A stretch of 63,835 nucleotides of DNA, the filler included, from Octopus bimaculoides (Eukaryota), in the NCBI RefSeq assembly GCF_001194135.2. It is 7 parts of 7 records of this genome, joined end to end, with 100 filler letters (N's around TTAATTAATTAA, not from the genome) between each part and the next. Parts side by side here need not be neighbours in the genome. Positions count along the whole stretch, not along the records: positions 44,287 to 50,644 come from NC_068994.1; 6 more parts are not named here. One strand, given 5' to 3'. A program made the translations under genes and the position numbers. Positions 3,518 to 51,431 of the stretch are shown here, one piece after another; positions within the stretch are counted from its first letter, which is position 1, and the number at the start of each line of letters is the position of its first letter. Under the pieces are notes generated by a model. The model had not been told where the DNA came from. It worked only from the letters and a program-made list of their open reading frames with translations, and made no database searches.

Positions 3518-4544
3518 AATGAACAAACATCATTTACAGCTGTTTCAATTCCAGACCTTCAGAAAATTAATTCATAAAATTTTAAATTATTTGGAAGTTG
3601 AATCTCTTCAGAGGTAGTTTAAGATATACAAAATAGGTGTTCAATTCCTGCATGTTCAGTAAACGGCTGCAAACCGCTCATGCATTCATACACAAAAACA
3701 TTCAACATACATATACATGCGTATGCATACACTCATATAAATATATTTATGTATCTACATATACACCTATGTACACTCACATACACGTATGCACACTCGC
3801 ATACAGCATCCATCTACTCAAAAACACAAAGGTCTATACACCCGAACAATTTTAATATATATCATTGTTATATTAACCCATACATAGGTACATACATTTG
3901 TCAGTTTCAGCAGCTCGTCACCCATGCAAGTATTGATACACATAATAGCAATATTAATAGCACGTAGGTATGTGCTAACTGCAAAATAAGGATCAAACAA
4001 TTATTTCATTGTGGGTGGGGGAGATTGTCAAATGAGTAGATCCAATAGGCGTCTCCATTAAACAGAAGTAGACCGATGCTGACGTAAAGTGGTCAAGAAT
4101 AAACTAAAGTGAAACAAACCAACAATGAATATGGAATGGTAAGGTATGTTACAAATTACAGGCAAATTCATTCATTGTTACGGTGGAGGATCAAGATACT
4201 ACTATGGGAGAGTAAGGTACAGGAATGGATACTTGTGCACTCTACAATCTAAATTTACGTTAAGAGTCTGGCATTATATGATTATAAGAGGATGTAAAGG
4301 AGGAGTAGTAAAATTGTGCAACATAATATAGTTTAGTTATTATGAGTGGGAGAAGGGTTTTAAAACTCAGATGGGTTTCGCGTAAGTATATTAATGTTGG
4401 GTTACCTAAAAGGGGCCCAGGTAAGTTAATCTATTAATCAAATTATAATTGCAAGCTAGTTTATGCCAACATTAAGAATCGAATTCTATTTCTATGGTGA
4501 AGCGCTATAGCTGCCATTAATGGAGAAAATGCATATTAGATGCT

Positions 4545-7115
4545 TACAATTATTTATATCTAGAGAAAGCAAATTTGTGCAAGGGATTTTGCTCTTCCCT
4601 TGGGTTGAGTATTACGAGTCTAGCCTTTAATATGAAAAATATTTTCATTGATGTATAAGTGGCATTTCTTATTTTTTTACATTGTATGAAGGTGCGGAGG
4701 CAAGGAATTTCCATTTTAATCAAAACTGATTTCTTGATCTTTAAGCTCCTAAATAAATTTACTTAATCCTGTCGAGCTAATCTTATTTCTATTTCTGAAA
4801 GTGTGTAGGTACGCGGCTCATCTTCGCTTCATTTCGTTTTAGAAGTGCTATTAAGGGCTCAATTATCTTTATTTCTGAATCACATAGGTTGTGTTGTGGG
4901 GGGATAGCTAATTACTACTAGATTGGTATATATAGATGGATTATTAAGAAGTGTATTATGATTAATAGGGTTATTATAGTTGTTAGTATTATCATTACTA
5001 TGCTTGAAGTGTTAATTGAGGTTGTTATTTTCATTTTTATCATTGTTTTTATTATTGATATTGTTATTATTGTTATTTCTATCTAAATAGAATGTATCTA
5101 GTTCTTTATTATTATTTAGGGATGAAATGATGCTAGCTAAATTATGTATCAGACTATAACCTATCAATAATTTTCGAGTACCTGCTATTCTTATCAAGGT
5201 GTTTATTTATAGTTTGGAATATAGATTTGACAAAATTAGTTTTAATTTGCATAGCATACGCGAGTATAAGCCAATTACTATCTTTTGTTTTTCCAATATT
5301 CCTACCATACAACCGAATTTTATTTTTGTTGGAGTGATGAATGCTACATTTATGCTTATTTGTTTTTATCATCTTGTTATCTATGTTATACACGTTAGGC
5401 ACTCCATTGGTGATGTTACCATTAGGTTTTTGCTTATAATATTTTATTGTTGTTGTTGACGTTATGATTAGTGTTATTGTTGGTATTATTTGTACTACGC
5501 TTCATTCTCATAGTTATATTGTTATTTTTATTATTATTATTATTGTTGTTATATTTGGTGTTACAATTTCTATTCTTATTAGTGTTGGGCATTATAGGTT
5601 TCTGTACTTTATTGCTTAATTTAGGTAAATTTCTATATTCCTTATTACTGCTATTGATGTTATCAATATTATTACTAGTCATTATAGTATTATATGGAAT
5701 ATATTTAATTTTTCTTTTGTATCCTGTAGTTTTTAGTGCCCTGTTGTATTGTTCTTTATGCTTATTGAATAAATCCTCATTAGAATAAATTATTTAACTA
5801 ATGCTTTTTATAAGAGCTTTTTTATCGATTGCGGATGATTACTAAGAGAGTGTATATATTAGTATTTAGTTTCATGTAAGGTTCATGCAGTCCCGTATTT
5901 AAATTATAGTTAACGTCTAGGTAGTTGATTCAGTGGTTTTCATTCTCTGTAGTGATAGAAAGGCCAAATCTATTGAGAAATTTGTACAATTTTTTTAAAG
6001 TAGTTCTAGGCGTCTGTTAGAAGTATTTCTAATTATAAAACGTGCATCGTCCCTGTAGAGTCCTCCCACCAAATTATAGAAATTACTTATTTAAGTTGTC
6101 TAGTAGATATATGCCCACAAGGTGAGTCATTCCCGCCGAATCCGGGGATCCCATTGTTATATAAAAATAATTAAAGTTATCCTTTCTTGCTCGCAATTTA
6201 TTATCAAATTCAATAATAGAATTTCAGCCCGTGGGGATTACGTTTATTTCTTTCGTGCTGATCTTAGTGTGGTTCTTAGCAAAAATAAGGGCCCTATTTA
6301 AGATAGTAGGGTTTATAGAGGAGTCATAATTTTGAATATCTAATTGTAAAAGTTTATGCTTATCCTTATGCTGTATATTAGAAAACCAACCTATTGCATT
6401 TTGGATATTAGTCCATAATTCAAGTTCAATCTTTTTCCTAAGGGTAGGTATGTACTTATCTAGAATTGCTTTGCTAAGTTTTCCTAAATCTGATTTATTG
6501 GGGCAAATTAGTCTAACATGGGTGTTGCTTAAGAAGCTATCCTTATGGTCCTTAATTGTAATACGAGGACTAATAGGTGTAAAAGGTTCTGTTGTATCAC
6601 CTATATTGTAATCAGTCATAATTTTCTTAGCGTCTAAGCTGATTGTTTTATGAGTGCTTCTAGGAACTACTTTATATTTTTGTGATTTCTTTGTCGATGA
6701 GTTCATGATAAGCATTTATGTCCATGTTGTAAGTGCTTATGATTTTGCCTGAATCTACTATTATTCCCTTTTTAGATTTTAATTCGAGAATCAGGTTCTT
6801 TAGCTTCCTCTGGTGTTCACTGCGCTTAAGGGGGTGTTTTTTAAACTAAATGTCCTCAAAAGAGGACCAGAGTTGTTGTTCAAATGCATTAAGGTAGCTG
6901 TTTGGTGGTGGTTCTGAAAATTCCGGTGGTAAGGTTTTTATCGTCTATGGCGTTGGTGTTGGTGTTGATGTTAGTGTCGGTGTCTAGATAAGTTAGTTCA
7001 TGCTTCCTGTCGTAGTATTAGGGTTTCCAACGTAATCTATGGGTGAATTCACTGATTTTAAGTATTAGGTCTTTAGGATAGATTTTCTTGAGAGGGATAG
7101 GAATATTCAACTTTT
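4545..7115 (-). mobile_element. Decayed Penelope-like retroelement (RT plus C-terminal GIY-YIG region), probably Naiad clade
   Basis: Translated across stops and frameshifts: NIPIPS...HRLRWK; ITIKDHKDSF..VRLICPNKSDLGKLSK; LDIQNYDSSI; ITMGSPDSA; GLYRDD; NYLDVNYNLNTG; SNHP; KTNFVKSIF; LSKFI*ELKD..KWKFLA..Y..KKCHL..NE..LNPREE. This motif order is typical of PLE RT-EN proteins. Confidence 0.9.
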
Positions 7116-9475: not shown

Positions 9476-10445
9476 TCAGAGTAATAACTAAAACTGTACA
9501 CATATGCATACAACAAAACCTATTAATAACACCGCAGGCAGACATAGACTCACAGAAACACACCCACAAACATATACACAAATTCACAGACACGCACACA
9601 TATACACATATATGTATGCATACATACACACATACATGCATACATACATATGCACATATATGCACACGTATACACATACACATATGTTTGTGTGCACGTC
9701 TGTATCGATGAAATTATGTTCTTTTTATTTGTGTTATTGGTACTTTAAATCTTCCAGTATGAATGTCTGCTTATTTCTATATTCATTGCTGTAAAAGGGA
9801 ACATATATTGTAGAGTCAAATACTGATTTAATTCATTCATTTCAGAGAAAGGCCTGAGTCCTAGAGTATTCACTTAATTATTGCTGTCTCTCACATCAAT
9901 ACCTTGTATTACATTACCTTACACGTCGACCCAAAATTTGCAATACCTACCGATTCATATTGTGTAACATGAACATTTTTGTCGGCATATATGATTATTT
10001 TATTTCCCTTCATTTTGATTACAGCTGATTCCCCTTTCGGTTTAAACGAAATCTTTTTAAATGAACTTTACAAATATTGAAAATATAGCCCCGAACTAAA
10101 AGTTGAATAAAAATAAAAACTGTGTGGATGTAATGTTAAAATCTTTATTTGTTGCATGCTTTCTTTACAGGAACATAACGTATTCTGTCTCATTGAGTCC
10201 TTTATTCCGTATCTCACCTAAGGCTTAAAGGAAAGAAGAGGAGGTAAAAAGGGATTGATTGAGCTTGTTGTGGAGACATGGATATAATATGTGAAGGTTA
10301 AAGTACTCCGTTCTGGTTTGTGGTGGTAGAGAGTAACTGGGGAAGCGGTAAGGCAAAAAAAAATACATTAGATAACATTAGCTTTGGCTGGCTAATTTGG
10401 AGTTCTAGAAATCTATACGTTCAAGGGATTGGCTACTTAGGTTTA

Positions 10446-10673: not shown

Positions 10674-11550
10674 TACGCGCACTGCCCTACCCTGTGGTAC
10701 CTGCTTATCGCTGGTTGGATCGTACCACTTTGTGAACCACTATGACGTATAAAACTGCTCACTCACGATTGTCGATGTCCTATTGCCGTAGGCGGATGTG
10801 TTTGTGTATCTTAAATCTTCTTTCCCATCATCTAGCCAAATCAAAATCGGAATTTTAAGGATATTTATCAAATACATATACTACCTTCCACGGAGTGACG
10901 TTCTGGACTACAGTTTTGAAGACAGATCAAGTTCTATACCAATATCTGTATTTCAATAACTGTAATTCTGCACGATTGGGAAACTTATCTCTTATAAATG
11001 GAACATCTCTTTTGAATGGATGCATTTGGCATGTGATATCTGAGAATATACTTGCATATTCACTACATTGGTCGAAAGCGGATGTGCGGTCTCCAAACAT
11101 GCTAGTCTGTGAACTCACAATTGCCCTTTTTCAGAAATTATGGCCTTTACTAGTTTGGCTGTACACAGTGTCATCCTACTGACGAATTGATTAAGGCTGC
11201 CATTCATCTTAACTCTTCTTTGGTTTTCAGACAGCAAATGATGAGCAGATAATGATATAGCTGCAGGACTTTTATGAACGGATATTAACTACATTATATA
11301 AAGATTCTTAAAGTTGAAATGCTCATGATATTCAATGGGTCTATATGAATTAAACATTCATGATTATAAATATGTTCAGCAGTTTTATTTTTCCCAGGGA
11401 TAACATAACTAATCAATCGATCACAAAACTTATACGTTTCGGATTATAATAGATCCTTAACAATGTGTAACGAGAGGTTCACCGTTTATTTAACTTCTGT
11501 TTATATATATTTATGCATGAGCGTTCAATTGAGTGAAACAATTGATGATT

Positions 11551-11671
<121 letters not shown>

Positions 11672-14600
11672 TGTTCCCATATACATCCTTTCACGGAAGA
11701 GCAATTAAAGCAATGAGATGCAAGAAACACGGTATATCTAAGCATTTCATGAAACCACAAGGGAACAGCTTCTTTTAGTTTCTATAGTTGTATCTGTTGC
11801 ATGAAGTCATTCTTCCTTAAATCTTTTGAATAATTAACAGTAAATCTTCTGAACCGAAATCTTATAATTTTAAATCTTTAATTTACATTGAAATATTAAA
11901 CCCATTAAAAAGAAACTGCACTTCGGTTCATTGGGTTCTTGCTAATTAATTGAATATATATTCATAATATGAAGTTCAACTTTAAGCTGCCATTGTTGGG
12001 ATATGTATCCTGTCCAAATGTTTCTTTTAAGAGCTTCGATTGTGGTTCTTATCTTTATATCTTTATTTTTTTCATTTTTGTCAGCCATTTATTATTCTGC
12101 TGTCCTGACTGGAACCTCGTTGAAGAGTTTTGCAATGCGCTTGAAGATAACAGTCGGTTGTTTGATAATAATCTACGGGGTTTGGTGAAGGACTGGACAT
12201 TAATTGTCATAGGCCAATGTATTTGTTTCTTCTTAAAGCTTTGCTAGGTTAAAGTTAAAACTTACATTCAGCTGTCTTCCTCGGGTAGGAATTATTTAAT
12301 AATAACTTAACTTCATTTTGATGGCATATTGTAAATCACGTACCAATGGCTCCTGTATATGTCCAATGAGGAGGACAAAATTTAACCGTTCCCATATTGA
12401 CCAACTGTATCACCGAGATTTCCCATTAGTACAGGAATTTCCTATTCCAATGTCGTCGTTTCAATATTAATTCTCGTCAAAAATGGGGACGGTAAAGGCG
12501 TTTTTAAAATTCTCACGTATTACTACATATCTATAAAATGCAACCAGTATTAACCATATATTTCAAGTTCAAACAAATACAGAAAATGTAATATTAAAAT
12601 AATATTAATAATATGAAATATTAGAAACCTACTAACAGTCAGTGTTATTTATATATGTCGATAATGACATTTTAAACATATTCTTATGAACTTTGAAATA
12701 TATGCCGCAAATTCAGTCACGAAACATCATTTCCATTTGGCTAATGCAAAATACTTTAATCGCTACATTCAAAGTCATTTAATTCTACTTTGTCTTGCAA
12801 CCATTATTTATAATTGATAACAGTATATCTATTTATGTTGTGGTTTAAATAACATATTAAAAAGAGACGTTTTCTTTGTGTGCTAGAAGCAGTTAAGAAC
12901 TGGAAATGGAAGCATTTCAAATTGTGTATACCAACAATTGCTTTGTGTAGTGAAGAAAAACAAACTTTCTTAAAAGGATCAGATTAATAACATAAATAAC
13001 CAAAGCAAAATGGACCATTGTTCAAAATTATTGCTTATAATTATAGCAAATTGCTTCGGAAAGAAAATTTCAAAAACAAAATATCTGTAGATTATTTGTG
13101 TTGCATACAAACAGAAATTTGTTTATTAGATTATCGAAAATTATATTAATAATTAGTAGAGTCTAAGCCCGTAAAGAAAACGAAAAGTAAAATAAGTGAA
13201 ATTCTTCTGCCGAAATAAACACGAGTTCGATTTATTGATTCGCAATTGATATTATCAACTGTCCAGAACGCCAGACATCACTGACATCTGACTTTATTTT
13301 TAACAAATTTCAATAGGAGGTATTTTTAAAGGCTATAAATATTTTTGGTTAATATCAAAATTACAATGTGGAACCTATTTTAAACATTTGCTGTTTTGAC
13401 CTAAACTTCTGCTGCTGCAGTTGTTGCTAACTTAAAAGCTCTTTAGTTGAATCGATTCTGAAAATAAAACCTTTCTTCCATGATATAACAATATGAAGGA
13501 AGTAGTTATCAGCAATATGAACGAGCTGGTTAATTAGATAACCTTCAGAGTGCAAGAATGAAAGAAAGATCAATTTTCTCCATCGATAGTTAACATTGAA
13601 GTAAATGCATTCAGAAAAGAGGAATTGAAAAGAGGATTGATCTGAAGACAACCGTATTGAAATAATATTGAATAGACTGTACTGTTCATATGTGAAAGTA
13701 CTCAATGTGATTAGAACTGCTTTCATAGGTTCCATAACGATTTGGTGAAAGAAAAAGTTACATTTCTAAATATATAGAATTTTGGCTTGATTGGAAAATG
13801 ACCGAGAGAGCGAGAGATAGACGGTAGAAGTGGAAAAGTGGAAAAGTGATTGAATAAGAGTAAAAAGGTTGAAGGTAAATTTACATACTACACAATATGG
13901 AATCAAGGCAAACATTGTGGCATTTGGTTAAAAGACAACGATTTAGTTTAGAATTTCGGGAGCATTAAATTGTAATTTGACAGACGTTTTCTGCTATAAT
14001 TGATTCCATGAAAGAACATTAACTGCAAAAGATTACTGACAAGAGATATAACTATCATAATTATATAGTTTAATGGGCAGTAGTTTTAAGCACCCATCGC
14101 ATACATACGCCTACACACAAACATTAAACAGATATTCTGCAATTCTTTTCACCTATTACTGAATTCAGTCATTGAACTACGACCATCCTTCAAGCGTTAG
14201 TAGTCGATCGTATTGATTCTGTTTATTTCAATCTGGTTTTTATTTTAATAATAATAATCTTCATACATCAAATGACTAATTTGTGCTTTTAAATCGATTA
14301 GCAGTTTTGTAAATATAAACTTAAACACGCGTGTATATTTCTGTACGTGTGTGCATATATGAATATTTCTGTGTATATGCACGTTTATATCAACAGTGAT
14401 GTCTATTATTTGTTGCCTTACTTAATCTTGAACATATAAATAAATCTCCTAGAAGATAAGAATAGTTAAATCATAGACATTGGTGCACAACACTGAACGT
14501 TATTAGGTCATGAAATTCATCACAGGATTAACTTGCGAAATTTGTTCGATTCCAGATATAGAGCTCTAACACTATTCTATTGACAAACTCCTTTATATAT

Positions 14601-15322
14601 ATAAATAGATATTAGATGTTGTTGCTTTAAATTTTGAGGAAGTGGCCAGATATATATTTCTTAAATATGTATGAGATTAGTAAAAGAATCTCGACATTTT
14701 GGACTAAGTCCTTCAGAGGAAAGGATAAAAATATATTTTCATTGTACTTAATTTCTTAGAACTTGGACACATGAAATGGTACATAGATTTTGCGCATGCG
14801 TGAGATATAAGTCAGTAAACAAAGTATTCACTGATGTGTGCCGCATGGGCCAAGTAAAAGTTAAATCAATATTCATACTTGAAATAGCGTTAGCTTAAAA
14901 TAACGATGCGTATAATATTTACAATATATATATAAATTTAGAACGGCACTAGCGATAATGTTTGTCTGAGAGTAAAATTTCCCCAAACAAGTTAAAAACA
15001 CAATTCTCGCTTGAACAGCCTTAAAGTACGTATATTTATTTAATTTTAGCCCCATGAGCTTTCGCACAAATCATTTGAGATTTTGTGTAATGGTTTGTGT
15101 ATCGGAACGAGTATTTGTACTTAACTCAGAATAACTAGGTTTGTTCGTCTCTGTAGACACCAAACAAATTCGAAGCACCGGTGTCTCATGATCCGACGAC
15201 GACGTTCTGAGCATGCTCTGTATTATGCGACACATAAATGTTTTCGAGAAGTTTCTCTGAGACAAACATTAAAGCTAGCGTATTTCGACGTCTGTAAATA
15301 AACTATGTTATACATATTTTTT

Positions 15323-15610
15323 TCTACTCGAGGCACAAGGCCCTAAATTTGGTGGGAGGGGACCAGTCGATTAGATCAACCCCAGTATGCAATTGGTACT
15401 TAATTTATCGATCCCGAAGGCAAAGTCGACCTCGGCGGAATTTGAACTCAGAACGTAAGACAGATGAACGGTTATACATATTGTTAAACATATACATATT
15501 TTTTAAAGCAGAACTTATTGTTTGTAAGCCTAGTACTTATTCTATAGGTCTCATTTGACGAACCGCCAAGTTACGGGGACCGAAACATACCAACATCGGT
15601 TGTCAAGAGT
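15323..15610 (-). mobile_element. SINE family B fragment joined to a family A 3' part
   Basis: ggcacaaggcc...gtcgacctcggcggaatttgaactcag followed by cctagtacttattctat...ccaacatcggttgtcaag. Confidence 0.75.
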
Positions 15611-15644
15611 TGGTGTTGTCAAGAGATGGTTGTCAAGAGATGCA

Positions 15645-15678
<34 letters not shown>

Positions 15679-15778
15679 NNNNNNNNNNNNNNNNNNNNNN
15701 NNNNNNNNNNNNNNNNNNNNNNTTAATTAATTAANNNNNNNNNNNNNNNNNNNNNNNNNNNNNNNNNNNNNNNNNNNN
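15679..15778. other. Assembly placeholder: 44 N + TTAATTAATTAA + 44 N
   Basis: The identical 100-bp cassette recurs with the linker at 15723, 33337, 44231, 50689, 56716 and 62182. Confidence 0.97.
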
Positions 15779-15996
15779 ATATATATAAAAGGTTGAAAAG
15801 TAACACACGACTTGGTATGTATAAGGAATATAAGACAGGGTAAAAAAAATGCTAAAGTGCCCTTGCATTTGAAAACTATGGAAATATATTTTTGAAAAAA
15901 GCATTTCAATTCATCGCCGCAATGAATGAAACCCGTCCTAAAATGTTCTTCATGATAAATTATTTCAGCATTTTCTACCTTGTCTTATTTTCCTTA

Positions 15997-16047
<51 letters not shown>

Positions 16048-17505
16048 TTTATAACTTTAGTCTTCTTATATCAACTGTAATCAGATATGGAATGGACATA
16101 TAGATGACCTCGTCTCATTGGTTTTGATTTCAGAAGATCCGTTTTAATCTTACCCAGGTTCTCTTTGATGTATATTGAGATCTTTTAGAAGTTATGACAT
16201 TGTGATCTGTGTTATTATCAGAACATTGCGTTTATACTTATCACTGCGCAGCCCTCTTGGCACGTAATTTAACATAGTGATCCGCGTCTAAAGGTTGCCA
16301 GGTAGATGTAAGGCTTTGACTTCATACATCTAAAGATGTATAACTTCTTAAGTGTTGATAAACTGGATGGTGAAGGACCGTAACTTTTTGTGTCTTCACC
16401 TTGTACTAAATTATGGCAGGTACGATGCTTTTGTGTGTAGAAGACACTATCATGAATCAAGCATTTTTATGTAACGTGTAATGCACTTCTGGAGAATCTA
16501 GTCGCTTATTACACAGGCATAATCGCTATGGAAACATCTAATGTAATCGGCTACACTTAATGTGTAATGAAAAGTAGAATGCAATATATAAAATAGAGAT
16601 TAATAGTGTTTTTCATCGATCATATGACAAAAAGAAAAGTAAAAGAATATATCTGTAGTTTTGCACAACCCTATTCGTTTAGATCAGACACGGATTCTGC
16701 GGAATCGTTTCCCAAGAAGCGATAGTCATTTCCTCTAAACATGTCGACAAAGATTATAAAATGTTGTGCGTTCCACTAAGCTAAGTATTTTTAAAAAATA
16801 GTGCATGATCGATAGCTCAGGGGCCACGCTGGACGTTTTCTATTAACTGGTATGGAAACTGATGAAAAGTAGCGAGACCAGATAAAATAAGATTAATAGA
16901 TGGACAAAAACAGAAGTGTAGAAAGAAGGAAATCAGAGTGAATAAAAGGAAGGCGGAAGAGGAAAAGATGGAAAGAATGAACAGAAATAGAGAGGCAGAT
17001 TGAGACAAAAAAAGAAATTCTAAGTATATTAGCTAGGTAGAAGGATAAAAGGAAAAATAAATGATTGCTTCTACTCTCAGCAAGTGTCTGCTAAAACGAA
17101 AATGACATCATAAATTCATAAATTTTCTCGTGAATAAAATTTGTCACGTTATAAGTAATGAACTTGTTAATGAAAGATGTATACATTCACAACACGTTTA
17201 TCAAAATCTACAGGAGTGAAATGTCACAACATAGAAAAAGTACAAATAGCGCTGAAGAAAATGCTGCAAATTACAATTTTGAATACAAATACAAAGCAAA
17301 ATGAATACTTATCCAACAACAGCAGAAGATTACCAGAAAGAACTCTACTATATAAGAAATAATTCAAGTTTCGTCCATACAGTCTTAAGATGTTTCATAA
17401 GGCAGTTGATAAAATATCTGGAGAGGATATTTCCTGTAATTAAGATCAAGAACGTGTTATTTGTTTATTTCAAGTCTATTTCATCCATTAGCACTTGAAA
17501 ATGCA

Positions 17506-18913
17506 CACCCAGAATCACGCTAATAGCTTAGGAGCGAACTTTAGGATTTCTCAGTTTTCTGTGAATCTATGTTGATAACACTTTTCCCAGCTGGTTTGCA
17601 CACTAAGGCAACACCATTGTCATGCATTCATTATTCTGTGTAACGTCCTTTCTTTTTTTTTTATTTCAAATTCTTCATTTTATGGGTGAATCACGCTAAT
17701 AGCTTTTGAATGAAAATAGCCCATCTAGACATATTGATTTTCAGATAATGAAGGGTAATGATACATATTAAGTATACATTAAGTATATATTTAACAGAAA
17801 TACATAATAATGTTATAACAGTTATGGACATAATGAATTGTTTAGCCAAATATGCGCCATTTCGTCTGATAACTTAAAAAGACCCTATTGGTCATGGAAT
17901 CTCTCAAATTCCTTAATTGTAGCAGGTTGGTCTGCCTATTCTGCAGCTTTGATGGTCACCCATGAGATATTTTTCGACGTCAATTGGCGTCCATCAGCAT
18001 AAGCAGCTTGTTTAATTATGGAACAAATATTTTCGATTGGGTTGAGATCCGGAGATGCTGGTGGCCACACCATCAGTCTTCTACCTTGTATGTTGTAAAG
18101 CTGCAGTAATGTTTGGGCGGTCCTACCAGAGTGAGAGGGAGCGTTGTCATGCATGAATAAGAGATTCCTTAGAAGTAACAGTGGTATGTCATCTGGCCAG
18201 GGATCTATGACCTTCAGGAGATTCCAGTAGGCGGCATCTGTCTATTTAACTCTTTCGGGCATCCTGATTGGTCACCAAGTCTGTCCCCAATGATACCAGC
18301 CCACAACATAGTTCCTCCACCCTGTAGTTGACATCGTAAACGTTGGTTACACTGATCTACAAAAGTGACCCAAACATTTGCCCAACGTTCAGTTCAGTCA
18401 AATGACAACCTGGTCTCGAAGATACGATTTCTGGTGGTTTTCGGTACACGAGGAAGTCTGCAAGCGGTGAAAATGGCTTTGCTTGTTTGTCTACTTTTCC
18501 CACATAACTTGCGCCAAATAATTCTTAAATGCCTAGCTATCACAGTAATGGAGGTCCCTTAATCGGACCGGTTCTTCCTTGTCGAAGTATCTTTCAGGAG
18601 TTGTCTAACCGTGTCCACATGTCGACCTACTTTCTCCGTAATGACACAAAGACAAGTACATTTAACACTTTTCCTGATGATGACAGACCTTTCTTCATCG
18701 TTAAGGTATTTTCCACGCCCCATTGTTCTTAGGGAAGAGAGAGGCTATTAGCGTGGTTGACCCCAAAACTGAAGAATCTAAAGTAGAAAAGAATGGATGT
18801 TACACAGAATAATGATAAAATAACAATGGTGTAGCCATAGTGTGCAAAATCGATTCACAAAAAACCGAGAAATCCTAAGTTGCACTACTAAGCTGTTAGC
18901 ATGGTTCTGGGTG
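17506..18913 (-). mobile_element. Tc1-family DNA transposon, decayed, with long TIRs
   Basis: Transposase from ATG at 18723 (MGRGKYLNDEER...) to the DDE region HDNAPSH...WPPASPDLNPIEN; inverted termini cacccagaa... match over ~130-150 bp (17506-17660 vs 18785-18913); TA at the right flank. Confidence 0.92.
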
Positions 18914-44130: not shown

Positions 44131-44286
44131 ATTATATGCACGCCTGTGTAAATATATATTTGCATACATATGTGTGTATATATATANNNNNNNNNNNNNN
44201 NNNNNNNNNNNNNNNNNNNNNNNNNNNNNNTTAATTAATTAANNNNNNNNNNNNNNNNNNNNNNNNNNNNNNNNNNNNNNNNNNNN

Positions 44287-44619
44287 AATATGACTTGGAT
44301 AATTATCATTGTAGCAGCAGCTGTAATACTGTCTGTGGCTATTGTAGTGTCCATAACACTGTGTGTTTTCAGATGTATTAATCACTTCAATAATTCATCT
44401 GCAGAAAAAAATAATCCAAAATTTCTATCGAGGACTGAAATGAGACAAATCCTGTATCAGACTAACAATCCTGTTGCAATAACTCGGAATGCAGAAGAGA
44501 TATTTAGCAGAAATCTTCAGTCAATAAACCCCAAAAGTCCATATTATCCAGAGATGGAACAATCAGCCAATGAATGGAAATTCTCAACAACACCCAGGAG
44601 ACTTCCACCAGTTCCACAG
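44287..44619 (+). CDS. Uncharacterised single-pass membrane protein, first visible exon (5' end at an assembly gap)
   Basis: (N)MTWIIIIVAAAVILSVAIVVSITLCVFRC... TM helix, then a tail ending PRRLPPVPQ; donor CAG|gtatct at 44619/44620, phase 0. Confidence 0.75.
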
Positions 44620-45822
44620 GTATCTAGGCAACAAATCTATCTTTCAAGTGTTGTTTAATGCTTTTGTTTTTAATAATATTTATTCACTTCATTATTCCTT
44701 ATATCGCCATATCAGCATATAATTTAATACAAGCTGTAGAGTGGACTTCAAATGTTTTTCTTATCCTACTTCCTCAGAGGTTTATAAATTTCAGAAAATT
44801 ATTTGCTATAGCCATCATTCTGGAAACCTTAATGTTCAGAAGAATAAGTTAGTTTCTGGTTTGGCCAATAACACCACCTAAAAATTCTTTACTGTTTTTA
44901 ATCCTGATATTTGTAAGCATGGGAATTACCCTGGAACTTTTATGGATTCTTATTAGAGTAAGCACCTGATTTAGCTATTATTTGGTTCCATATGTTTTGA
45001 CATTAAAGCTGCTATTAGTCACCAGGCAATATAACAATGAAAGGTAATGTCTTTAAGTAAAAATAAGTTTATATGCTCTGGATAGCATTAAAACCACTTG
45101 GATATTCTACACTCATCCAGAAATTAGTTTTAGGGTTCCTATTGCGTTTAAATTTCCATATTTTCATGGCTACTCAGATCTTCAAATGCTGTGTTGTGAT
45201 CTGTGTGTTGTATTCTTGTTATATTTGCATGTAATCTGGATACAATGAGCTGGATAATGGATAATTATACAGAATCATTATATTTATGGATCTCTGCTAA
45301 ATATTTTACTCAGTTTACATTGCAAAACATAATTTTCATATGTACTACTCATTGTAGTACTAACTGATTCTTGAATCACTTCTCTCCAAAAGATACACTA
45401 ACTGTGAAATGCCATTTTAAGTGGTTAATCAACCAGTCTCATAAAGATCTACCAGAAGCATTTTTAATATAAATATATGATCTGTTATACATTTAACAAT
45501 TTTACTATCTCAAATGGTTTTACGTATTGCGTTTTTGTAGAAGTACAAAATTTAAAACATCAAACTCACACACTCACATACAAACCTCACTCACCCTCTT
45601 CCAACTCAAGAAGGACATGATATAGGCTAAACAACTAACTAACTCTACTTAATCTTGTCTAACCAACACAATACACAGCACAACAATACTTGAACTAATT
45701 CTAAGTACTTCAGAAATATACTGTAATGAAAACTGTAATCTCATATGAAATCATCATAAACTCATAATAGTGTACACTAACTGTCAAATGTTTAATCTAA
45801 AGCTTTGTTATTTCAATGACAG

Positions 45823-45970
45823 ATCTACAATAAACAGATTTCAGATGAGTCTTGTGAGCAAGGTGACAACAGTGGCATTGTGACATCAAACAACTTAAGT
45901 GATACATTACCATCTCAAAGAGATCACTGCCGTGGATGGAGTGAAGGAGATATTAAAAATCATATATCAG
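45823..45970 (+). CDS. Uncharacterised membrane protein, middle exon
   Basis: Acceptor ttatttcaatgacag|ATC; open frame IYNKQISDESCEQGDNSGIVTSNNLSDTLPSQRDHCRGWSEGDIKNHIS; donor CAG|gtaact, phase 1. Confidence 0.75.
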
Positions 45971-46389
45971 GTAACTTGTCAAATAACAAATGCTGACACT
46001 TACTTCCCATAAGTGCATGGATATATTTATAACACTGACTTTTTAATATCATATAAAAGATTTTAACAGTATAAATGAATGGATATCTTTCAATGATTAT
46101 CTGCAACAATAAACACTGATTCCATATAAGCTCACAGCAGCAATTGTATCATATTTTATAACCTCAAATCCCTTTATTGTAATGTAAAAAGGTTTATAGG
46201 TTTATATAAGATACTCAAAGAGTAAACTATTTAAAAGAATGTGCTTTAATGTAAGCAGCTAAATCTTGCATAATATAATATAAAAACTAATATAATAATG
46301 TTGGATTAATTTAATAAAAGGCATTGGGATAATATAAGGTAGCTATCCCTTTCAACACTTATTAAAAAATAATGTTTTTTATCTTTCAG

Positions 46390-46478
46390 AATACAGTAAC
46401 TACACACCAAACATACCTCCAATACTAAAAGATGAACATGAACAAGACACATATCTAGAACCAATATATAAGAAATAG
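46390..46478 (+). CDS. Uncharacterised membrane protein, last exon
   Basis: Acceptor tttttatctttcag|AA completes phase 1; EYSNYTPNIPPILKDEHEQDTYLEPIYKK*; AATAAA at ~46549. Confidence 0.75.
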
Positions 46479-48452
46479 TAAACTCAAAATAAGCACAATT
46501 CTAATTCTTTGCTTTGGAGATTTTTAAAATTTCCTTGCATTTAATATTAATAAAGCAACAGAATCAAAACATTGCTTCTGCTTTAAAATAAAGTAAAATT
46601 AATTTGAAAATACAGAATAATGTAATATCAACTAATATAGCTACATTTATACATTAAGAATATGCATTTGTAAATATTTTCCTTCAAACTGTAACTTAAG
46701 AACAAACAAATTAGTTCATTCAAATTCATAAATATCATAATTTAATTTGGACATACACTAAGCCAAAATATTCAAAAGATAGGGTAAAATATTCTGAATT
46801 TCCTCTAGTATATTAATAGTACAGTTTGTATTTACCCTGCAAAAAAAGAAATGCTGTCAGAAAATATTAAAATATAAAAACAAAAGTACAAGAAAACATT
46901 TACTCCAAAATTCTACAATTTCTACAACTACTTATACTATTCACTAATAATATACTATTACAGGTTAATGAATAAACAGTAAAATGGCCCAAAAATTACA
47001 AAATGTCTATAATTTTTATGTAATTAAAATAATCATTCTACAGTTTAATCCATCACAATATGTACCATTAAATTACCATTGAAATGAGAAATTGATATTT
47101 TACTTATTGCAATACACAATGTGCAAACATGAGCATACAAATTAGGGTGTCATAAGCATACATATACAAATAGAATGTAATACGTGTGTGTATGTGTGTG
47201 TGTGTGTATGCGTGTGTGAGTGTGCATGTGTGTGTGCATATGTACATATTCATGTACTTTAAAATAAATTAGAGTTATTGTAAAATTAACTATTAAATAT
47301 TTCAACCATTGTTTAAAATAATTTGAACAAATTCATTATGCACCAAACATAGATTCTTTAAAGAGTAGTTGGCTCCCTATTTAGCTCACAAACCTACACC
47401 ATCTGGATACTGCAATTGTCACACTACTACAGCAGCAGTTACACTGGAACACTACACAATAATGTCTTCTCTAAGAGGCCCAAACAAAGGATTTCTCAAT
47501 AACAGTAAGTCATTTTGCAATTTTACATTAAATATTTTAGTAATACATATTTAAATATTGAGATATGATGTGAAAAATTAAAAATAAATAATAGTGTGTG
47601 TTTCATGGTAATATATATGAACTACACAACAGAGTGCCATAGACAGGTCTAGCCATTACTAAAAGTAATTACTACAGCAGTAGTGTCGTTTCTATGAGAA
47701 GTTAGATATTTTATCAACAACTATTATGTTAATACTCATCTCTGTCAGCCAATTGTATTTAATTAAATATTTTCATATATACTGCCACATTTCTTAATAT
47801 GATTTAATGATATAATATTGTTATAATTGAAAATATTGAATGGATCCTTGCATCATCTTATTTCTCTCCACTGAAATGGAGTGCTAGATATCGATGTATT
47901 AGACCATATAAGGTTTTCTAGTATATAATTCATATTTTGGGATATATAAATAATGAAATACTGCATATCACTGCCAATATATTGTTAAAACACCCTCACT
48001 TTATTTACCATAGATATACCTATAATAAATTTAAAATTTTAAATATTTCCTTGATATTTATTATATATTTATATTATGTTATATTTTTAGATCTTTTCAT
48101 TTTGGTCATATGCAAATTCAAGTTTTCTAGTTTTCCAACTTTGGTTAAATGAAACCGTCATTTGTAACAGGCATTTCTTATTTTATTCACATTTTTATGA
48201 AGTAATTGTGAATTGCAAGTATGTATACATGTATACACACACGCATACATACATATATGTAATAATTGTTTGGCTATACTAGTTATACATTCCAAAAGAG
48301 CATTAATAATGAACTAGTATTATTATATTCTTGTACCACTACTACCACTTAACCTCAAGTGAATTTGATTTGGAAACACAAACCTACACATTGTCAAACA
48401 TCTGGATTGTATTTTTGATATTTGTAAAAATTCTACCAAACCCAGACACATT

Positions 48453-48887
48453 ATTATCATCATCATCCAGTGTTTTAAATCTGGGTTTTGTCCCTGTTAA
48501 TGGGGGTGGTCAGATCCACCTCAATGCCCTAGCAACCACCTTGCCATCTTGCCCAGTTTTAGGCGTCCTCCTTTCTCAAGCCAACCCTCCCAATCTCCTC
48601 CTCTATCTGTCCCCTCTGCATTTTCCTCAGTCTACCTCACTTTTGCGGTCCATTTACCTCAAACACAAGCATCTGTCTCAAAACATGCTCCTCATCCCTC
48701 CTTAATACAGGCCCATACCACTGCACTCCATTCGCCCTTGCCAGCCATTTCACCGATTCCTCCAACCCCAGCATCCCCATCAAGTCCTCAGTCCTCTTCT
48801 TTTCAAACAGCTTCACACCACACATTTCTCTCACTATTGCTCTCTCAGTCCTTCTCAAAATTGCCATCTTTCTCCCTCAGACACCAT
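48453..48887 (-). mobile_element. RTE LINE 3' end
   Basis: LRRTERAIVREMCGVKL...NGVQWYGPVLRRDEEHVLR, then 3' UTR and a (GAT)n tail. Confidence 0.88.
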
Positions 48888-49378
48888 NNNNNNNNNNNNN
48901 NNNNNNNNNNNNNNNNNNNNNNNNNNNNNNNNNNNNNNNNNNNNNNNNNNNNNNNNNNNNNNNNNNNNNNNNNNNNNNNNNNNNNNNNNNNNNNNNNNNN
49001 NNNNNNNNNNNNNNNNNNNNNNNNNNNNNNNNNNNNNNNNNNNNNNNNNNNNNNNNNNNNNNNNNNNNNNNNNNNNNNNNNNNNNNNNNNNNNNNNNNNN
49101 NNNNNNNNNNNNNNNNNNNNNNNNNNNNNNNNNNNNNNNNNNNNNNNNNNNNNNNNNNNNNNNNNNNNNNNNNNNNNNNNNNNNNNNNNNNNNNNNNNNN
49201 NNNNNNNNNNNNNNNNNNNNNNNNNNNNNNNNNNNNNNNNNNNNNNNNNNNNNNNNNNNNNNNNNNNNNNNNNNNNNNNNNNNNNNNNNNNNNNNNNNNN
49301 NNNNNNNNNNNNNNNNNNNNNNNNNNNNNNNNNNNNNNNNNNNNNNNNNNNNNNNNNNNNNNNNNNNNNNNNNNNNNN

Positions 49379-49650
49379 TAGTGCTCCAATTATTATTGGT
49401 AGGAATATGAATTCATAGTTTGGATATAAAAGCTGGAGCTTTTGAAGAAGTTATCTATACATATCCCCTTTTTCTTTGATTTTCAAAGAGATATTTATAT
49501 CTGCTGGGCAGCTGACCTCTGTGATGGTAGATATATTTGCTCCTCTGTCCCAAACAACATCCAGTCTGCTATGTTTACATTTGACAGAAGTTTTGATGGG
49601 AATATTCCACCCGTATTCTTTGAGTTGAATTCATTTCGAGGCCTCTGAAT
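49379..49650 (-). mobile_element. R4/Dong-like non-LTR retrotransposon fragment, restriction-like endonuclease domain
   Basis: KEYGWNIPIKTSVKCKHSRLDVVWDRGANISTITEVSCPADINISLKIKEKGDMYR*LLQKLQLLYPNYEFIFLPIIIGAL matches the RPD..IE.SCP..EK..KY..P..IGALG pattern. Confidence 0.8.
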
Positions 49651-51431
49651 ATTCACAGACCTAGGAAGCACATTTTCACATATTTTTTTTTTGTTTCTCA
49701 GCTAACATGGGACCATCTTCAAAATTTTATTTACGTAAGAAAAAGAAGGAAATATTCAAAATATTAGAAGGGGGGATAACTCTATTATTTTAATAGTTTT
49801 CATAGAAAATATATTGGCTACCACACAATTGAAAAGTTTCATAGATATATCTTGGAGACCAAGAGATTAACTACTGAATTTAATTTGCAACACTATATCG
49901 TCCAACAAGAATTGTAAGTGTAATAATTATACTTACTTTCAAATGGTGTAAAGCTAAGTTGAAAGAATATCCAAGAAAAGGGCGAGGACATAAATTAGTA
50001 CGTTTTTAAAATTAGCTCTGTAATTTGGTTGATATAAAAACTTTTAAATTAAACATTTTGATGAATAATCTGAGACAATGATAGATATTTGTATATTTTT
50101 TTAATCTAATGTGACTAAAAATATAGGATGATATAAAAAGGAAAAGTTCAAGTGAGCACTATATAGGAGTCAATTCAAATTGTTGAGTCATTTACTGCAT
50201 GGTACACAACCCCAGCTCCTCATCGCACACTTTCTATATCCATTTATACAATTTGGTTTAGTCTCTCAGTTCAGTTCCAGATCAATTCCTACAGTGGCTG
50301 ACATTACTTTAATTTCACCTGAGTTAATAACTTAACAACTATTTTTCATCAATTATATTACAGAAGTTACCAAACATTATGAATTAGAAAGTTTCTAATA
50401 TTTTTCATCTCTCAATTTAAACGATCTATAATATTCATATAGTTAACATTTTTATATTAGATTGTATGATTCAATTAACAAGCTCTCTTTTCTTTTTAAA
50501 TTTAGATATATTTATGAATAATAATGAATAACAACAATGGTTTCAATCAACACTTTACAGCTTTACATTTTTTATGGCTTACTGTATTCTGGTGTATCCT
50601 TAGACATTACTTACCATGTCAAGGAAGAAGACAGTCCTCACACCNNNNNNNNNNNNNNNNNNNNNNNNNNNNNNNNNNNNNNNNNNNNTTAATTAATTAA
50701 NNNNNNNNNNNNNNNNNNNNNNNNNNNNNNNNNNNNNNNNNNNNCTTTCCAATCATCATCATCATCATCATCATCATTTAACGTCCGCTTTCCATGCTAG
50801 CAGGGGTTGGAACGTGCCATCAGCAATTACTCAGGGTCAGCAGCTGGTGACCTTTTTAGTAAAACAAAAAATAAGTGAAACGCAAGCACATGACTGAGTT
50901 GGAGGCAGATTTACTTCTGCTTTTATAACATGTAAAGAAAACGGTGTTGTAGAAATGTATGCAGCAGCATGTGTGCTACAGCAGTTCTATGTGTAGCTTA
51001 AATACTGAGATTGAAAAGCAGGGGTGAATTATGCCTACCTAATCTACAAAAAAATAAAACATTTTATGCTATCAATATTTTATTCAGAGTACACACTGCC
51101 TACCTAGGCAGCACGTCCCTGGAGACATTTGTCCGAGGTTCCACACAGTGGGGATGAACCCCAAACCGCATGGTTGGGAAGAGCAAGCTTCTTACCACTC
51201 AACCTCATGGAGATCATCGACATCAGCTTTTAATGGGTTGGATGGGTTGACAAGATCCAACACATCAAGCTGCTGGACACCCATCCCCAATATCAACTTT
51301 ACAGAGTGTTTTGGGTGCCTTTTTGTGTGTGTGACTGACAAAAGTAACTTGCAAGACAAAGAAAAGGAAAAAAAACCGGGAGGAGGAGCCCCTTGACCAA
51401 GTGGGGTTGCAGAAGAGAAGGCACAACTCAC

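What the first reader, a model, noticed from the sequence alone, without database searches (positions are those of the whole stretch)
44287..46478. Unrecognised membrane protein with a LAT/PAG-like signalling tail
Seen: three exons with canonical sites and matching phases give ~189 aa. The order is: a 24-residue TM helix; juxtamembrane CVFRC; YPEM (YxxM); RRLPPVP (RxLPPxP); EYSNY (YxN); TYLEPI (YxxP); IYKK. Known: these are consensus docking motifs for PI3K p85 SH2, Src-family class I SH3, Grb2 SH2 and Crk/Nck/Abl SH2. A minimal ectodomain, juxtamembrane Cys and multiple Tyr motifs with no catalytic domain define vertebrate transmembrane adaptors (LAT, PAG, NTAL). Inference: if the ATG at 44290 (A at -3) is the start, this is a type III adaptor with no counterpart I recognise in molluscs. 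Otherwise it is the tail of an orphan receptor, and the N-M-T sequon just before the helix suits an ectodomain stalk hidden in the gap at 44187-44286.
Basis: partly seen in the sequence, partly recalled or inferred. Interest (0 to 1): 0.7.

Follow-up and report, generated by a model that had tools for sequence, protein, structure and literature searches.

The report
Tail of an octopus protocadherin gene
The supposed new signalling adaptor is the membrane-spanning and cytoplasmic end of one gene in the known tandem protocadherin array of Octopus bimaculoides; its adhesion ectodomain is hidden in an assembly gap, so the finding is ordinary.

Summary
Three exons (44287-44619, 45823-45970, 46390-46478) with GT/AG sites and matching phases give 189 aa, with one TM helix, CVFRC and the listed motifs. 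NCBI's own model for this locus uses the same two junctions.

The main interpretation, a stand-alone LAT/PAG-like adaptor starting at ATG 44290, fails. The piece is O. bimaculoides chromosome CM046614.1. In the gene just upstream, 94.6% identical over this exon, one open frame (broken only by a 244-N gap) runs from cadherin repeats through NMTWIIIIVAAAV to RRLPPIPQ|gt. An ungapped O. sinensis relative shows EC6, TM and tail in one frame. For this gene, a signal peptide and EC1 lie 2.2 kb upstream, across a 1774-N gap. The tail aligns to the C-termini of full-length octopod protocadherins, including a GenBank O. vulgaris protocadherin (QBA31128.1).

The receptor is a clustered protocadherin.

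Each gene in the array has its own exons 2 and 3. The tail is under purifying selection (dN/dS 0.36). RxLPPxP and TYLEP are conserved within the close subfamily. The YxxM methionine and EYSNY are not conserved. SH2/SH3 coupling is plausible but untested.

The parts
44287..44619 (+). 3' end of the large first exon of a protocadherin gene ('gene B'). It encodes the last stalk residues (N-M-T), the TM helix and the first ~83 cytoplasmic residues, and ends at donor CAG|gt.
   Evidence: It is 100% identical to L001:9848-10180. It is 94.6% identical to the end of the cadherin-repeat ORF of the upstream gene, L001:1947-2282.
44296..44370 (+). Transmembrane helix WIIIIVAAAVILSVAIVVSITLCVF, followed by juxtamembrane C26 and C30 (CVFRC).
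   Evidence: Hydropathy. It matches the published octopus protocadherin TM pattern [IV][IV][IVA]xxx[AV][VI]xx[SA]xx (PMC6339937, Table S2). The first Cys is present in every tail that includes the TM region; the second is replaced by Tyr in two.
44542..44592 (+). Conserved block YYPEMEQSANEWKFSTT (aromatic-Tyr ... EW-x-ST).
   Evidence: Y87 and W97 are nearly invariant in the 12-tail alignment. The Met at +3 is not conserved. The same block is repeated about 9 times in tandem in P0006.
44596..44616 (+). RRLPPVP, which fits the class I SH3-ligand consensus, immediately before the exon 1 donor.
   Evidence: Occurs in 0.025% of shuffles. Conserved as R-x-L-P-P-x-P in 7 of 14 tails compared (O. 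bimaculoides, O. sinensis, Argonauta); one more has QILPPTP. It is lost in more distant octopod protocadherin tails.
45823..45970 (+). Exon 2 (private to this gene): IYNKQ...DTLPSQRDHCRGWSEGDIKNHIS.
   Evidence: The junction region aligns with residues 797-837 of the 852-aa O. vulgaris protocadherin P0009.
46390..46478 (+). Exon 3 (private to this gene): EYSNYTPNIPPILKDEHEQDTYLEPIYKK plus the stop codon.
   Evidence: TYLEP is conserved in the subfamily, including Argonauta P0011.
50537..50644 (+). Start of the next protocadherin gene in the tandem array ('gene C'): signal peptide MVSINTLQLYIFYGLLYSGVS and the first EC1 residues LDITYHVKEEDSPHT. It is cut by the end of the piece.
   Evidence: The same N-terminal pattern, (I/L)DITY(H/Y)VKEEDSPHT, is seen in L001:7630-8073 (which continues YIGDIA) and, with single substitutions (R or N), in L003 and L005. 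The end of gene C's exon 1 is at L001:18525-18626.

Best explanation
The finding is the C-terminal third of a clustered (tandem-array) protocadherin gene of Octopus bimaculoides, chromosome CM046614.1.

Gene structure. One large first exon encodes the signal peptide, about six extracellular cadherin repeats, a short N-glycosylated stalk (..NLNMT), the TM helix and about 83 cytoplasmic residues. Two short exons of the gene's own complete a ~160-residue cytoplasmic tail that matches no known protein domain family. In this assembly the middle of exon 1 falls in a 1774-N gap. What remains visible looks like a small TM protein, and NCBI annotates it as a 138-aa 'uncharacterized protein'.

Shown: the identity as a protocadherin tail, the exon structure, the tandem array with private 3' exons, and purifying selection on the tail.

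Inferred from family knowledge: the protein acts as a homophilic cell-recognition and adhesion receptor, mainly in neurons.

Inferred and untested: the tail works through short linear motifs. Candidates are the juxtamembrane Cys pair (possible palmitoylation), the nearly invariant Tyr87 within the YY..E...EW.ST block, RxLPPxP (SH3 ligand) and the C-terminal TYLEP. These would recruit SH3/SH2 proteins such as Src-family kinases, or sorting adaptors.
For: Locus identity:
- The piece is 100% identical to GCA_001194135.2 CM046614.1 (L001:9848-16205).

Neighbouring and related genes:
- The upstream neighbour, L001:3-2291, is one open frame broken only by a 244-N gap. It has 5 Pfam Cadherin stretches (E 2.7e-58) plus Cadherin_2, and continues ...QNDAG...SNDTSPMLTAIHSQSDNNLNMTWIIIIVAAAV...RRLPPIPQ|gt.
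- Its ectodomain matches solved protocadherin ectodomains (PCDH10, gamma-A9, gamma-B4, alpha-7) at E 1e-63 to 1e-77.
- O. sinensis L003:5827-6384 has no gaps. EC6, TM and tail lie in one frame, aligning to residues 620-800 of the protocadherin P0009 at E 5e-44.

This gene:
- L001:7630-8073 encodes a signal peptide plus EC1 (Cadherin_2 26.7 bits against a cut-off of 23; DAESLC and DINDHQP motifs). A 1774-N gap follows, then NMTW. About 1.6 kb is expected from the neighbour.
- The 189-aa product aligns to residues 690-837 of the 852-aa O. vulgaris protocadherin QBA31128.1 (E 5e-23), across the exon 1/2 junction.

Family distribution:
- A profile search of 1.84 billion representative proteins gave only 15 hits. 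Among the eight best new hits looked up (all E <= 3.2e-8), every protein over 600 aa is an octopod protocadherin with the match at its C-terminus.

Array structure:
- Three consecutive genes each have their own exons 2 and 3. This agrees with PMC9068888: full gene duplication, no shared constant exons.

Selection and motifs:
- dN/dS between neighbours is 0.36 (0.21 for the exon 1 part).
- The TM helix matches the published octopus protocadherin TM pattern (PMC6339937).
Against: - The ectodomain of this particular gene is not sequenced between EC1 and the stalk (1774 N). Its continuity and intactness are inferred from neighbours, not seen.
- The nominal gap length puts EC1 and the TM out of frame. 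This is meaningless if the gap size is only an estimate, but it is not proof of integrity.
- The O. sinensis relatives have a frameshift between EC5 and EC6, which could be an assembly error or real decay.
- There is no expression data here.
- For the mechanism, no motif partner has been tested. The p85-specifying Met of YxxM is present in about 6 of 14 tails. EYSNY is limited to the closest copies. The more widely conserved YEEIP motif of the family is absent from this gene.
Confidence: 0.93

Rival explanations
1. This is a stand-alone type III transmembrane adaptor (LAT/PAG/NTAL-like), translated from ATG 44290, with a ~3-residue ectodomain. It would be palmitoylated at CVFRC and would dock PI3K, Src-family, Grb2 and Crk/Nck proteins.
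For: ATG 44290 has A at -3. A TM helix, juxtamembrane Cys residues and Tyr/Pro motifs are present. Public annotations list several such short proteins: P0001 at 205 aa and P0003 at 198 aa. A short isoform from an internal promoter cannot be formally excluded without transcript data.
Against: The short models all begin at Met residues internal to a cadherin-repeat ORF. MLTAV/MLTAI lies within ...VSNDTSPMLTAI..., and the models are cut off by gaps or frameshifts. The N-M-T codons are in frame with EC6 in every relative with upstream sequence. EC1 with a signal peptide lies upstream of this gene. The homologous tails sit at the C-termini of 646- to 1162-aa protocadherins. There is no Pfam match to any adaptor family at E <= 10.
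Confidence: 0.03
2. The locus is a decaying or fragmentary protocadherin copy. The tail exons would be remnants of a pseudogene whose ectodomain is disrupted inside the unsequenced gap, so no functional protein is made.
For: Fragmentary reading frames that may represent pseudogenes are reported in the squid (D. pealeii) protocadherin clusters (PMC9068888). The ectodomain here cannot be inspected (1774 N). O. sinensis relatives show frame disruptions. The exons 2+3 part evolves faster (dN/dS 0.46).
Against: All visible coding parts are open: the signal peptide, EC1, TM and tail. All four splice sites are canonical and match the neighbour in phase and length. dN/dS is 0.21-0.36, well below 1. 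NCBI built a spliced model on these junctions.
Confidence: 0.08
3. This rival concerns the mechanism only. The Tyr and Pro motifs would not be SH2/SH3 docking sites. They would be trafficking signals, or chance matches within a disordered tail. For example, Y87-x-x-hydrophobic could be an AP-2 sorting signal controlling surface levels.
For: At the Y87 site, 8 of 14 tails fit Yxx[LIMVF] but only about 6 of 14 fit YxxM. YxN and YxxP arise in 62% and 52% of shuffles. EYSNY is not conserved beyond the closest copies.
Against: RxLPPxP is far from chance (0.025% of shuffles) and is kept from Octopus to Argonauta. The wider family carries YEEIP, which resembles the optimal Src SH2 ligand pYEEI (own knowledge). 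Vertebrate Pcdh-alpha binds Fyn (cited in PMC6339937).
Confidence: 0.4

Closest known systems
Octopus/octopod clustered protocadherins (Albertin et al. 2015; Styfhals et al. 2019, PMC6339937; Albertin et al. 2022, PMC9068888; PMC9795677)
   Same: It lies on the same chromosome as the named O. bimaculoides protocadherin relatives found here. It sits in a head-to-tail tandem array. One large exon encodes the ectodomain and TM. It carries the published octopus-specific motifs (the TM pattern; D[AT]ExxC in its EC1; QNDAG in the neighbour's EC6). The tail is homologous to the C-termini of named O. bimaculoides, O. vulgaris, O. sinensis and Argonauta protocadherins. Each gene has private 3' exons.
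   Different: Nothing of kind. This copy is split by an assembly gap, so it is annotated as 'uncharacterized protein LOC128249406'. Compared with more distant family members, it lacks the YEEIP motif and has EYSNY instead.
Vertebrate clustered protocadherins (Pcdh alpha/beta/gamma)
   Same: They share about six EC repeats followed by a TM helix, all in one large exon. They share tandem arrays and an ectodomain similar over EC1-EC5 (E 1e-63 to 1e-69 to alpha-7, gamma-A9 and gamma-B4). The tail has no catenin-binding domain. Proline-rich and tyrosine-based coupling to Fyn, FAK and Pyk2 is reported for the alpha and gamma tails (PMC6339937, PMC7339444).
   Different: There are no shared constant exons; each gene has its own exons 2 and 3 (PMC9068888). 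There is no Cadherin_tail (PF15974) match. Profile comparison finds only a 10-residue resemblance, NEWKFSTTPR to TDWRFSQAQR, at probability 1.4%. The expansions are independent.
Transmembrane adaptor proteins LAT, PAG/Cbp, NTAL/LAB
   Same: In the visible fragment only: a single TM helix, juxtamembrane Cys residues, and a tail without any recognised domain that carries Tyr and Pro motifs.
   Different: The protein has a large cadherin ectodomain, with the N-terminus about 690 residues upstream in relatives. There is no sequence similarity to any adaptor family. It belongs to a neuronal adhesion-receptor family, not an immune adaptor family.
Delta-protocadherins (PCDH1/7/9/11, PCDH8/10/17/18/19)
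   Same: The ectodomain of the neighbouring gene matches PCDH10, 17, 18 and 19 structures strongly.
   Different: There is no RVxF (CM3) motif and no WIRS motif in the tail. There is no Pfam Protocadherin (PF08374) match. Styfhals et al. likewise found no CM1-3 in octopus protocadherins (PMC6339937).

Membership tests
Transmembrane adaptor proteins (LAT/PAG/NTAL type) | Very short extracellular N-terminus: translation starts just before the TM helix. | tested here: not met
   In the adjacent paralogue and the O. sinensis relative, the N-M-T codons are in frame with EC6. EC1 with a signal peptide lies upstream of this gene across the gap.
Transmembrane adaptor proteins (LAT/PAG/NTAL type) | Juxtamembrane Cys motif (CxxC) for palmitoylation. 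| tested here: met
   CVFRC is present, and the first Cys is conserved in all tails that include the TM region. Palmitoylation itself cannot be tested here.
Transmembrane adaptor proteins (LAT/PAG/NTAL type) | Multiple conserved SH2-docking tyrosine motifs. | tested here: inconclusive
   Y87 is nearly invariant, but its +3 Met is present in only about 6 of 14 tails. YxN is limited to the closest copies. Y[LV]xP at the C-terminus is conserved in the subfamily. YxN and YxxP are common by chance.
Transmembrane adaptor proteins (LAT/PAG/NTAL type) | Sequence similarity to a known adaptor family. | tested here: not met
   No Pfam family at E <= 10. No PDB sequence match of note.
Protocadherins (cephalopod tandem-array type) | TM helix plus tail homologous to the C-terminus of proteins with multiple EC repeats. 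| tested here: met
   Profile hits P0006, P0008, P0009 and P0013 (646-1162 aa) match at their C-termini and are named protocadherins. BLASTP to P0009 residues 690-837 gives E 5e-23.
Protocadherins (cephalopod tandem-array type) | Signal peptide and EC repeats upstream in the same gene. | tested here: met
   L001:7630-8073 has a signal peptide and EC1 (Cadherin_2 26.7 bits against a cut-off of 23; DAESLC, DINDHQP) at the expected distance. EC2 to EC6 of this copy lie in a 1774-N gap and are inferred from the neighbour, which has 5 Cadherin stretches at E 2.7e-58.
Protocadherins (cephalopod tandem-array type) | Ectodomain and TM helix encoded by one large exon. | tested here: met
   The neighbour gene L001:3-2291 is a single open frame ending at a GT donor, broken only by a 244-N gap. 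L003:5827-6384 shows EC6, TM and tail in one ungapped frame.
Protocadherins (cephalopod tandem-array type) | Head-to-tail tandem array of complete genes. | tested here: met
   Three consecutive genes on the + strand in L001, about 8 kb apart, each with its own exons 2 and 3. The same holds in O. sinensis L002. Consistent with PMC9068888.
Protocadherins (cephalopod tandem-array type) | No classical-cadherin catenin-binding domain. | tested here: met
   No Pfam hit of any kind in the tail at E <= 10.
Protocadherins (cephalopod tandem-array type) | Published octopus-specific motifs (TM pattern; EC1 D[AT]ExxC; EC6 QNDAG). | tested here: met
   The TM pattern matches at residues 6-18 of the product. 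DAESLC is in this gene's own EC1. QNDAG is in the neighbour's EC6. One EC1 pattern misses by one residue in this copy (patterns from PMC6339937, Table S2).
Vertebrate clustered protocadherin architecture (alpha/gamma) | Variable first exons spliced to shared constant exons. | tested here: not met
   Exons 2 and 3 are found downstream of genes A and B; for gene C only its exon-1 end lies within the locus. PMC9068888 states the same for cephalopods.
Vertebrate clustered protocadherin architecture (alpha/gamma) | Cadherin_tail (PF15974) constant cytoplasmic domain. | tested here: not met
   No Pfam hit. hhalign against a gamma constant region gives probability 1.4%. That sequence was recalled from memory and validated as PF15974 at 97 bits.
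Delta-protocadherins | Cytoplasmic CM motifs (RVxF PP1 site) or WIRS motif. | tested here: not met
   Regex scans of the tail found no [RK][VI]xF and no WIRS pattern.

The most novel reading that the evidence does not exclude
The tails of the octopod tandem protocadherins would carry a conserved docking module. Its parts are a nearly invariant Tyr within the YY..E...EW.ST block (tandemly multiplied in one family member), an RxLPPxP SH3 ligand in this subfamily, and YEEIP and TYLEP tyrosine motifs. This module would couple adhesion to Src-family kinase signalling. That would be a convergent, or via the [DE]W[KR]FS resemblance to the alpha/gamma constant region even ancestral, counterpart of vertebrate Pcdh-alpha/Fyn signalling. 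Published surveys report no analogy between octopus and vertebrate protocadherin tails, so this would be new.
Probability: 0.2. Interest if true: 0.5.

Novelty: already known. Interest (0 to 1): 0.15.

Why it matters
Mainly as a correction. An apparently new 'adaptor' is a fragment of a well-described gene family, separated from its ectodomain by an assembly gap. The same artefact explains several 'uncharacterized protein' models in Octopus annotations: LOC128249406, LOC106867376, LOC106870064/5, LOC106878683 and LOC118766097. These should be merged with neighbouring cadherin models, which affects counts of protocadherin genes.

A smaller positive point concerns signalling. How cephalopod protocadherins signal inside the cell is unknown. 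The conserved blocks mapped here (Cys pair, LYQxNNP, Y..EW.ST, RxLPPxP, DTLxS..GWSE, YEEIP/TYLEP) give concrete peptides for binding and phosphorylation tests.

Tried and rejected
- Pfam scan of the 189-aa product at E <= 10: nothing. PDB sequence search of the tail: only noise, E 0.7-1.5.
- A second word-index protein search with the 12-tail profile A2 returned only proteins already known. No extension to squids or other molluscs was obtained. All profile hits I looked up are octopod.
- Conserved promoter element upstream of the protocadherin start codons (window 49537-50536 against the upstream regions of gene B, L005 and the O. sinensis genes): no similarity between O. bimaculoides genes. 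Only the about 100 nt before the ATG align among O. sinensis copies.
- Homology to the vertebrate constant region: rejected as evidence. hhalign probability is 1.4%, with only a 10-residue match. A literature search for that motif found nothing relevant.
- Albertin et al. 2015 could not be read (not held). Its motifs were taken second-hand from PMC6339937.
- WIRS and RVxF motifs in the tail: absent.
- Structure prediction was not run. The tail matches no known protein domain family, so a model would not bear on the question.
Full report
**1. Observation**

The piece (window 44287-50644) was read and translated. The three proposed exons exist as described.
- Exon 1 part: 44287-44619, with donor CAG|gtatct.
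- Exon 2: 45823-45970, with acceptor ...tttcaatgacag| and donor CAG|gtaact.
- Exon 3: 46390-46478, with acceptor ...ttttatctttcag| and stop TAG.

The lengths are 333 + 148 + 89 = 570 nt. The frame is open and gives 189 aa. Residues W4-F28 form the only hydrophobic segment. CVFRC, YPEM, RRLPPVP, EYSNY, TYLEPI and IYKK are all present. NCBI's model for the locus (LOC128249406, P0002, 138 aa from MRQIL) is 100% identical and uses both junctions.

**2. Where the piece comes from**

P0002 is encoded on Octopus bimaculoides chromosome CM046614.1 (GCA_001194135.2). The piece is 100% identical to L001:9848-14448 and 14940-16205. In the real genome the piece is preceded by a 1774-N assembly gap (L001:8074-9847).

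**3. What is upstream**

The first 336 nt of the piece also match L001:1947-2282 at 94.6% identity. There they are the end of one open frame, L001:3-2291, broken only by a 244-N gap. That frame starts in EC1 (..SPHTYIGDIAAD..DAESLC..) and runs through cadherin repeats. It continues ...VYQNDAGTYELEFIVKDGGTPVQSATTAIILTLFVSNDTSPMLTAIHSQSDNNLNMTWIIIIVAAAV...RRLPPIPQ and ends at a GT donor.

Pfam finds 5 Cadherin stretches (E 2.7e-58) plus Cadherin_2 in this frame. The ectodomain matches solved protocadherin ectodomains end to end: PCDH10, gamma-A9, gamma-B4 and alpha-7, at E 1e-63 to 1e-77.

For the finding's own gene, L001:7630-8073 encodes MNYNNDYNQHIKFYFLYGLMYTVVS|IDITYYVKEEDSPHTYIGDIAVD...DAESLC...DINDHQPEFPQKQIKI. 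This is a signal peptide plus EC1 (Cadherin_2 26.7 bits against a cut-off of 23). It runs straight into the gap. The gap is 1774 N; the neighbour predicts about 1.6 kb of missing exon.

An O. sinensis relative without gaps (L003:5827-6384) shows EC6, stalk, TM and tail in one frame. It aligns to residues 620-800 of an 852-aa protocadherin at E 5e-44. The 'MLTAV...' starts of the short public models P0001 and P0003 are therefore internal methionines of the protocadherin ORF.

**4. Relatives**

A profile of the tail was searched against 1.84 billion representative proteins. It gave only 15 hits at E <= 0.001. Among the eight best new hits looked up (all E <= 3.2e-8), every protein over 600 aa carries the match at its C-terminus. 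These are P0006 (1162 aa), P0008 (646 aa), P0009 (852 aa) and P0013 (876 aa). They are named protocadherins of O. bimaculoides, O. sinensis, O. vulgaris and Argonauta hians. The O. bimaculoides ones are on the same chromosome.

P0009 is QBA31128.1, a GenBank O. vulgaris protocadherin of 852 aa. The finding's product aligns to its residues 690-837 (E 5e-23), across the exon 1/2 junction: PPVPQ|IYNKQISD against IATQIYSQQVAM.

No non-octopod relative was found. A second search with a broader profile added nothing.

**5. Gene organisation**

tblastn of the three exon peptides locates three consecutive + strand genes in L001.

| Gene | Exon 1 | Exon 2 | Exon 3 |
|---|---|---|---|
| A | ends 2279 | 3580-3727 | 4601-4689 |
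| B (the finding) | 9848-10180 | 11384-11531 | 11951-12039 |
| C | start at L001:16098 (window 50537); end at 18525-18626 | not determined | not determined |

Genes A and B have identical exon lengths and phases, and canonical splice sites. Each gene therefore has private 3' exons. This is as published for cephalopods and unlike the shared constant exons of vertebrates (PMC9068888).

Between A and B, the tail has dS 0.20 and dN 0.073, giving dN/dS 0.36. The exon 1 part gives 0.21 and exons 2+3 give 0.46. This indicates purifying selection.

**6. The motifs**

Chance was estimated from 20000 shuffles of the tail.

| Motif | Fraction of shuffles containing it |
|---|---|
| YxN | 0.62 |
| YxxP | 0.52 |
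| YxxM | 0.10 |
| [RK]xxPxxP | 0.12 |
| RxLPPxP | 0.00025 |

Conservation was judged over 12 to 14 tails.
- Y87, W97 and P107 are nearly invariant.
- The block around them ([FY]Y..E...[DE]W.x[ST]T) is the family signature. It is repeated about 9 times in P0006.
- The Met of YxxM is present in about 6 of 14 tails. A hydrophobic residue at +3 (YxxPhi) is present in 8 of 14.
- RxLPPxP is kept in 7 of the 14 tails (one more has QILPPTP); these belong to the close subfamily, including Argonauta, and it is lost in more distant tails.
- EYSNY is limited to the nearest copies.
- Most other family members instead carry YEEIP, which this gene lacks.
- TYLEP is kept in the subfamily, including Argonauta.
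- The first juxtamembrane Cys is present in every tail that includes the TM region.
- There is no RVxF and no WIRS motif, and no Pfam domain.

The tail is thus a conserved region with a few constrained short motifs and no match to any known protein domain family. SH3/SH2 docking is a reasonable hypothesis; vertebrate Pcdh-alpha binds Fyn, as cited in PMC6339937. A sorting-signal role for Y87 fits the data at least as well. Nothing has been tested.

**7. Comparison with known families**

The locus passes every test I could apply for a cephalopod tandem-array protocadherin. This includes the published octopus-specific TM and EC motifs (PMC6339937, Table S2).

It fails the defining feature of transmembrane adaptors, a minimal ectodomain. 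It also fails the vertebrate alpha/gamma architecture: no shared constant exons and no Cadherin_tail domain. A profile comparison with a gamma constant region singles out NEWKFSTTPR against TDWRFSQAQR, but at 1.4% probability. That sequence was recalled from memory and then validated as PF15974. I treat this as a lead only.

**8. Verdict**

The thing itself is already known: one member of the octopus protocadherin expansion, mis-split by an assembly gap.

Residual uncertainty:
- whether this copy's ectodomain is intact, since it is unsequenced;
- what the conserved tail motifs bind.

Interest is low (0.15).

Noticed in passing
window 50537-50644 (+): This is the start of the next protocadherin gene in the tandem array: signal peptide MVSINTLQLYIFYGLLYSGVS, then LDITYHVKEEDSPHT (EC1). 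It is cut by the end of the piece. The rest lies beyond a 2318-N gap, with the end of its exon 1 at L001:18525-18626.
   Followed up: yes
window 48637-48867 (-), extending to the gap at 48888: A 76-aa ORF (MAILRRTERAIVREMCGVKLF...VQWYGPVLRRDEEHVLRQ) resembles the C-terminal region of non-LTR retrotransposon ORF2 proteins (my own knowledge). Pfam gave no hit. It is truncated by the 491-N gap at 48888-49378. It is probably a LINE remnant in the intergenic spacer.
   Followed up: partly
window 47184-47243: An imperfect (GT)n microsatellite of about 26 units, 76% matches, lies in the intergenic region downstream of the gene.
   Followed up: yes
window 44620-45822 and 45971-46389 versus L001:2280-3579 and 3728-4600: Introns 1 and 2 of neighbouring genes A and B cannot be aligned at all (blastn, word size 7). 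Their exons differ by only dS 0.20. This suggests exon-restricted gene conversion or rapid intron turnover. PMC9068888 proposes homogenisation by gene conversion in these arrays.
   Followed up: partly
P0006 (O. bimaculoides 'protocadherin beta-15', same chromosome), residues ~780-1160: The tail block seen here as SPYYPEMEQSANEWKFSTT occurs about nine times in tandem there (SSQFYFVLEPQNEW[KI]ASTT). This argues that the block is a self-contained functional module.
   Followed up: no
L001:1908-5717; L005:6001-8027; L002-L004:6001-7125: Several public 'uncharacterized protein' models are protocadherin tails split from their cadherin-repeat ORFs by N gaps or frameshifts. They are LOC106867376, LOC106870064/5, LOC106878683, LOC118766097/LOC115230993 and the 216-aa model upstream. 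Conversely, some models fuse many array members (4324- and 5049-aa products).
   Followed up: partly
L003:5654-5827 and L004:4680, 5654 (O. sinensis): There are frame breaks between EC5 and EC6, and in L004 also within EC2, in the O. sinensis relatives. I could not tell whether these are assembly indels or real pseudogenisation.
   Followed up: no
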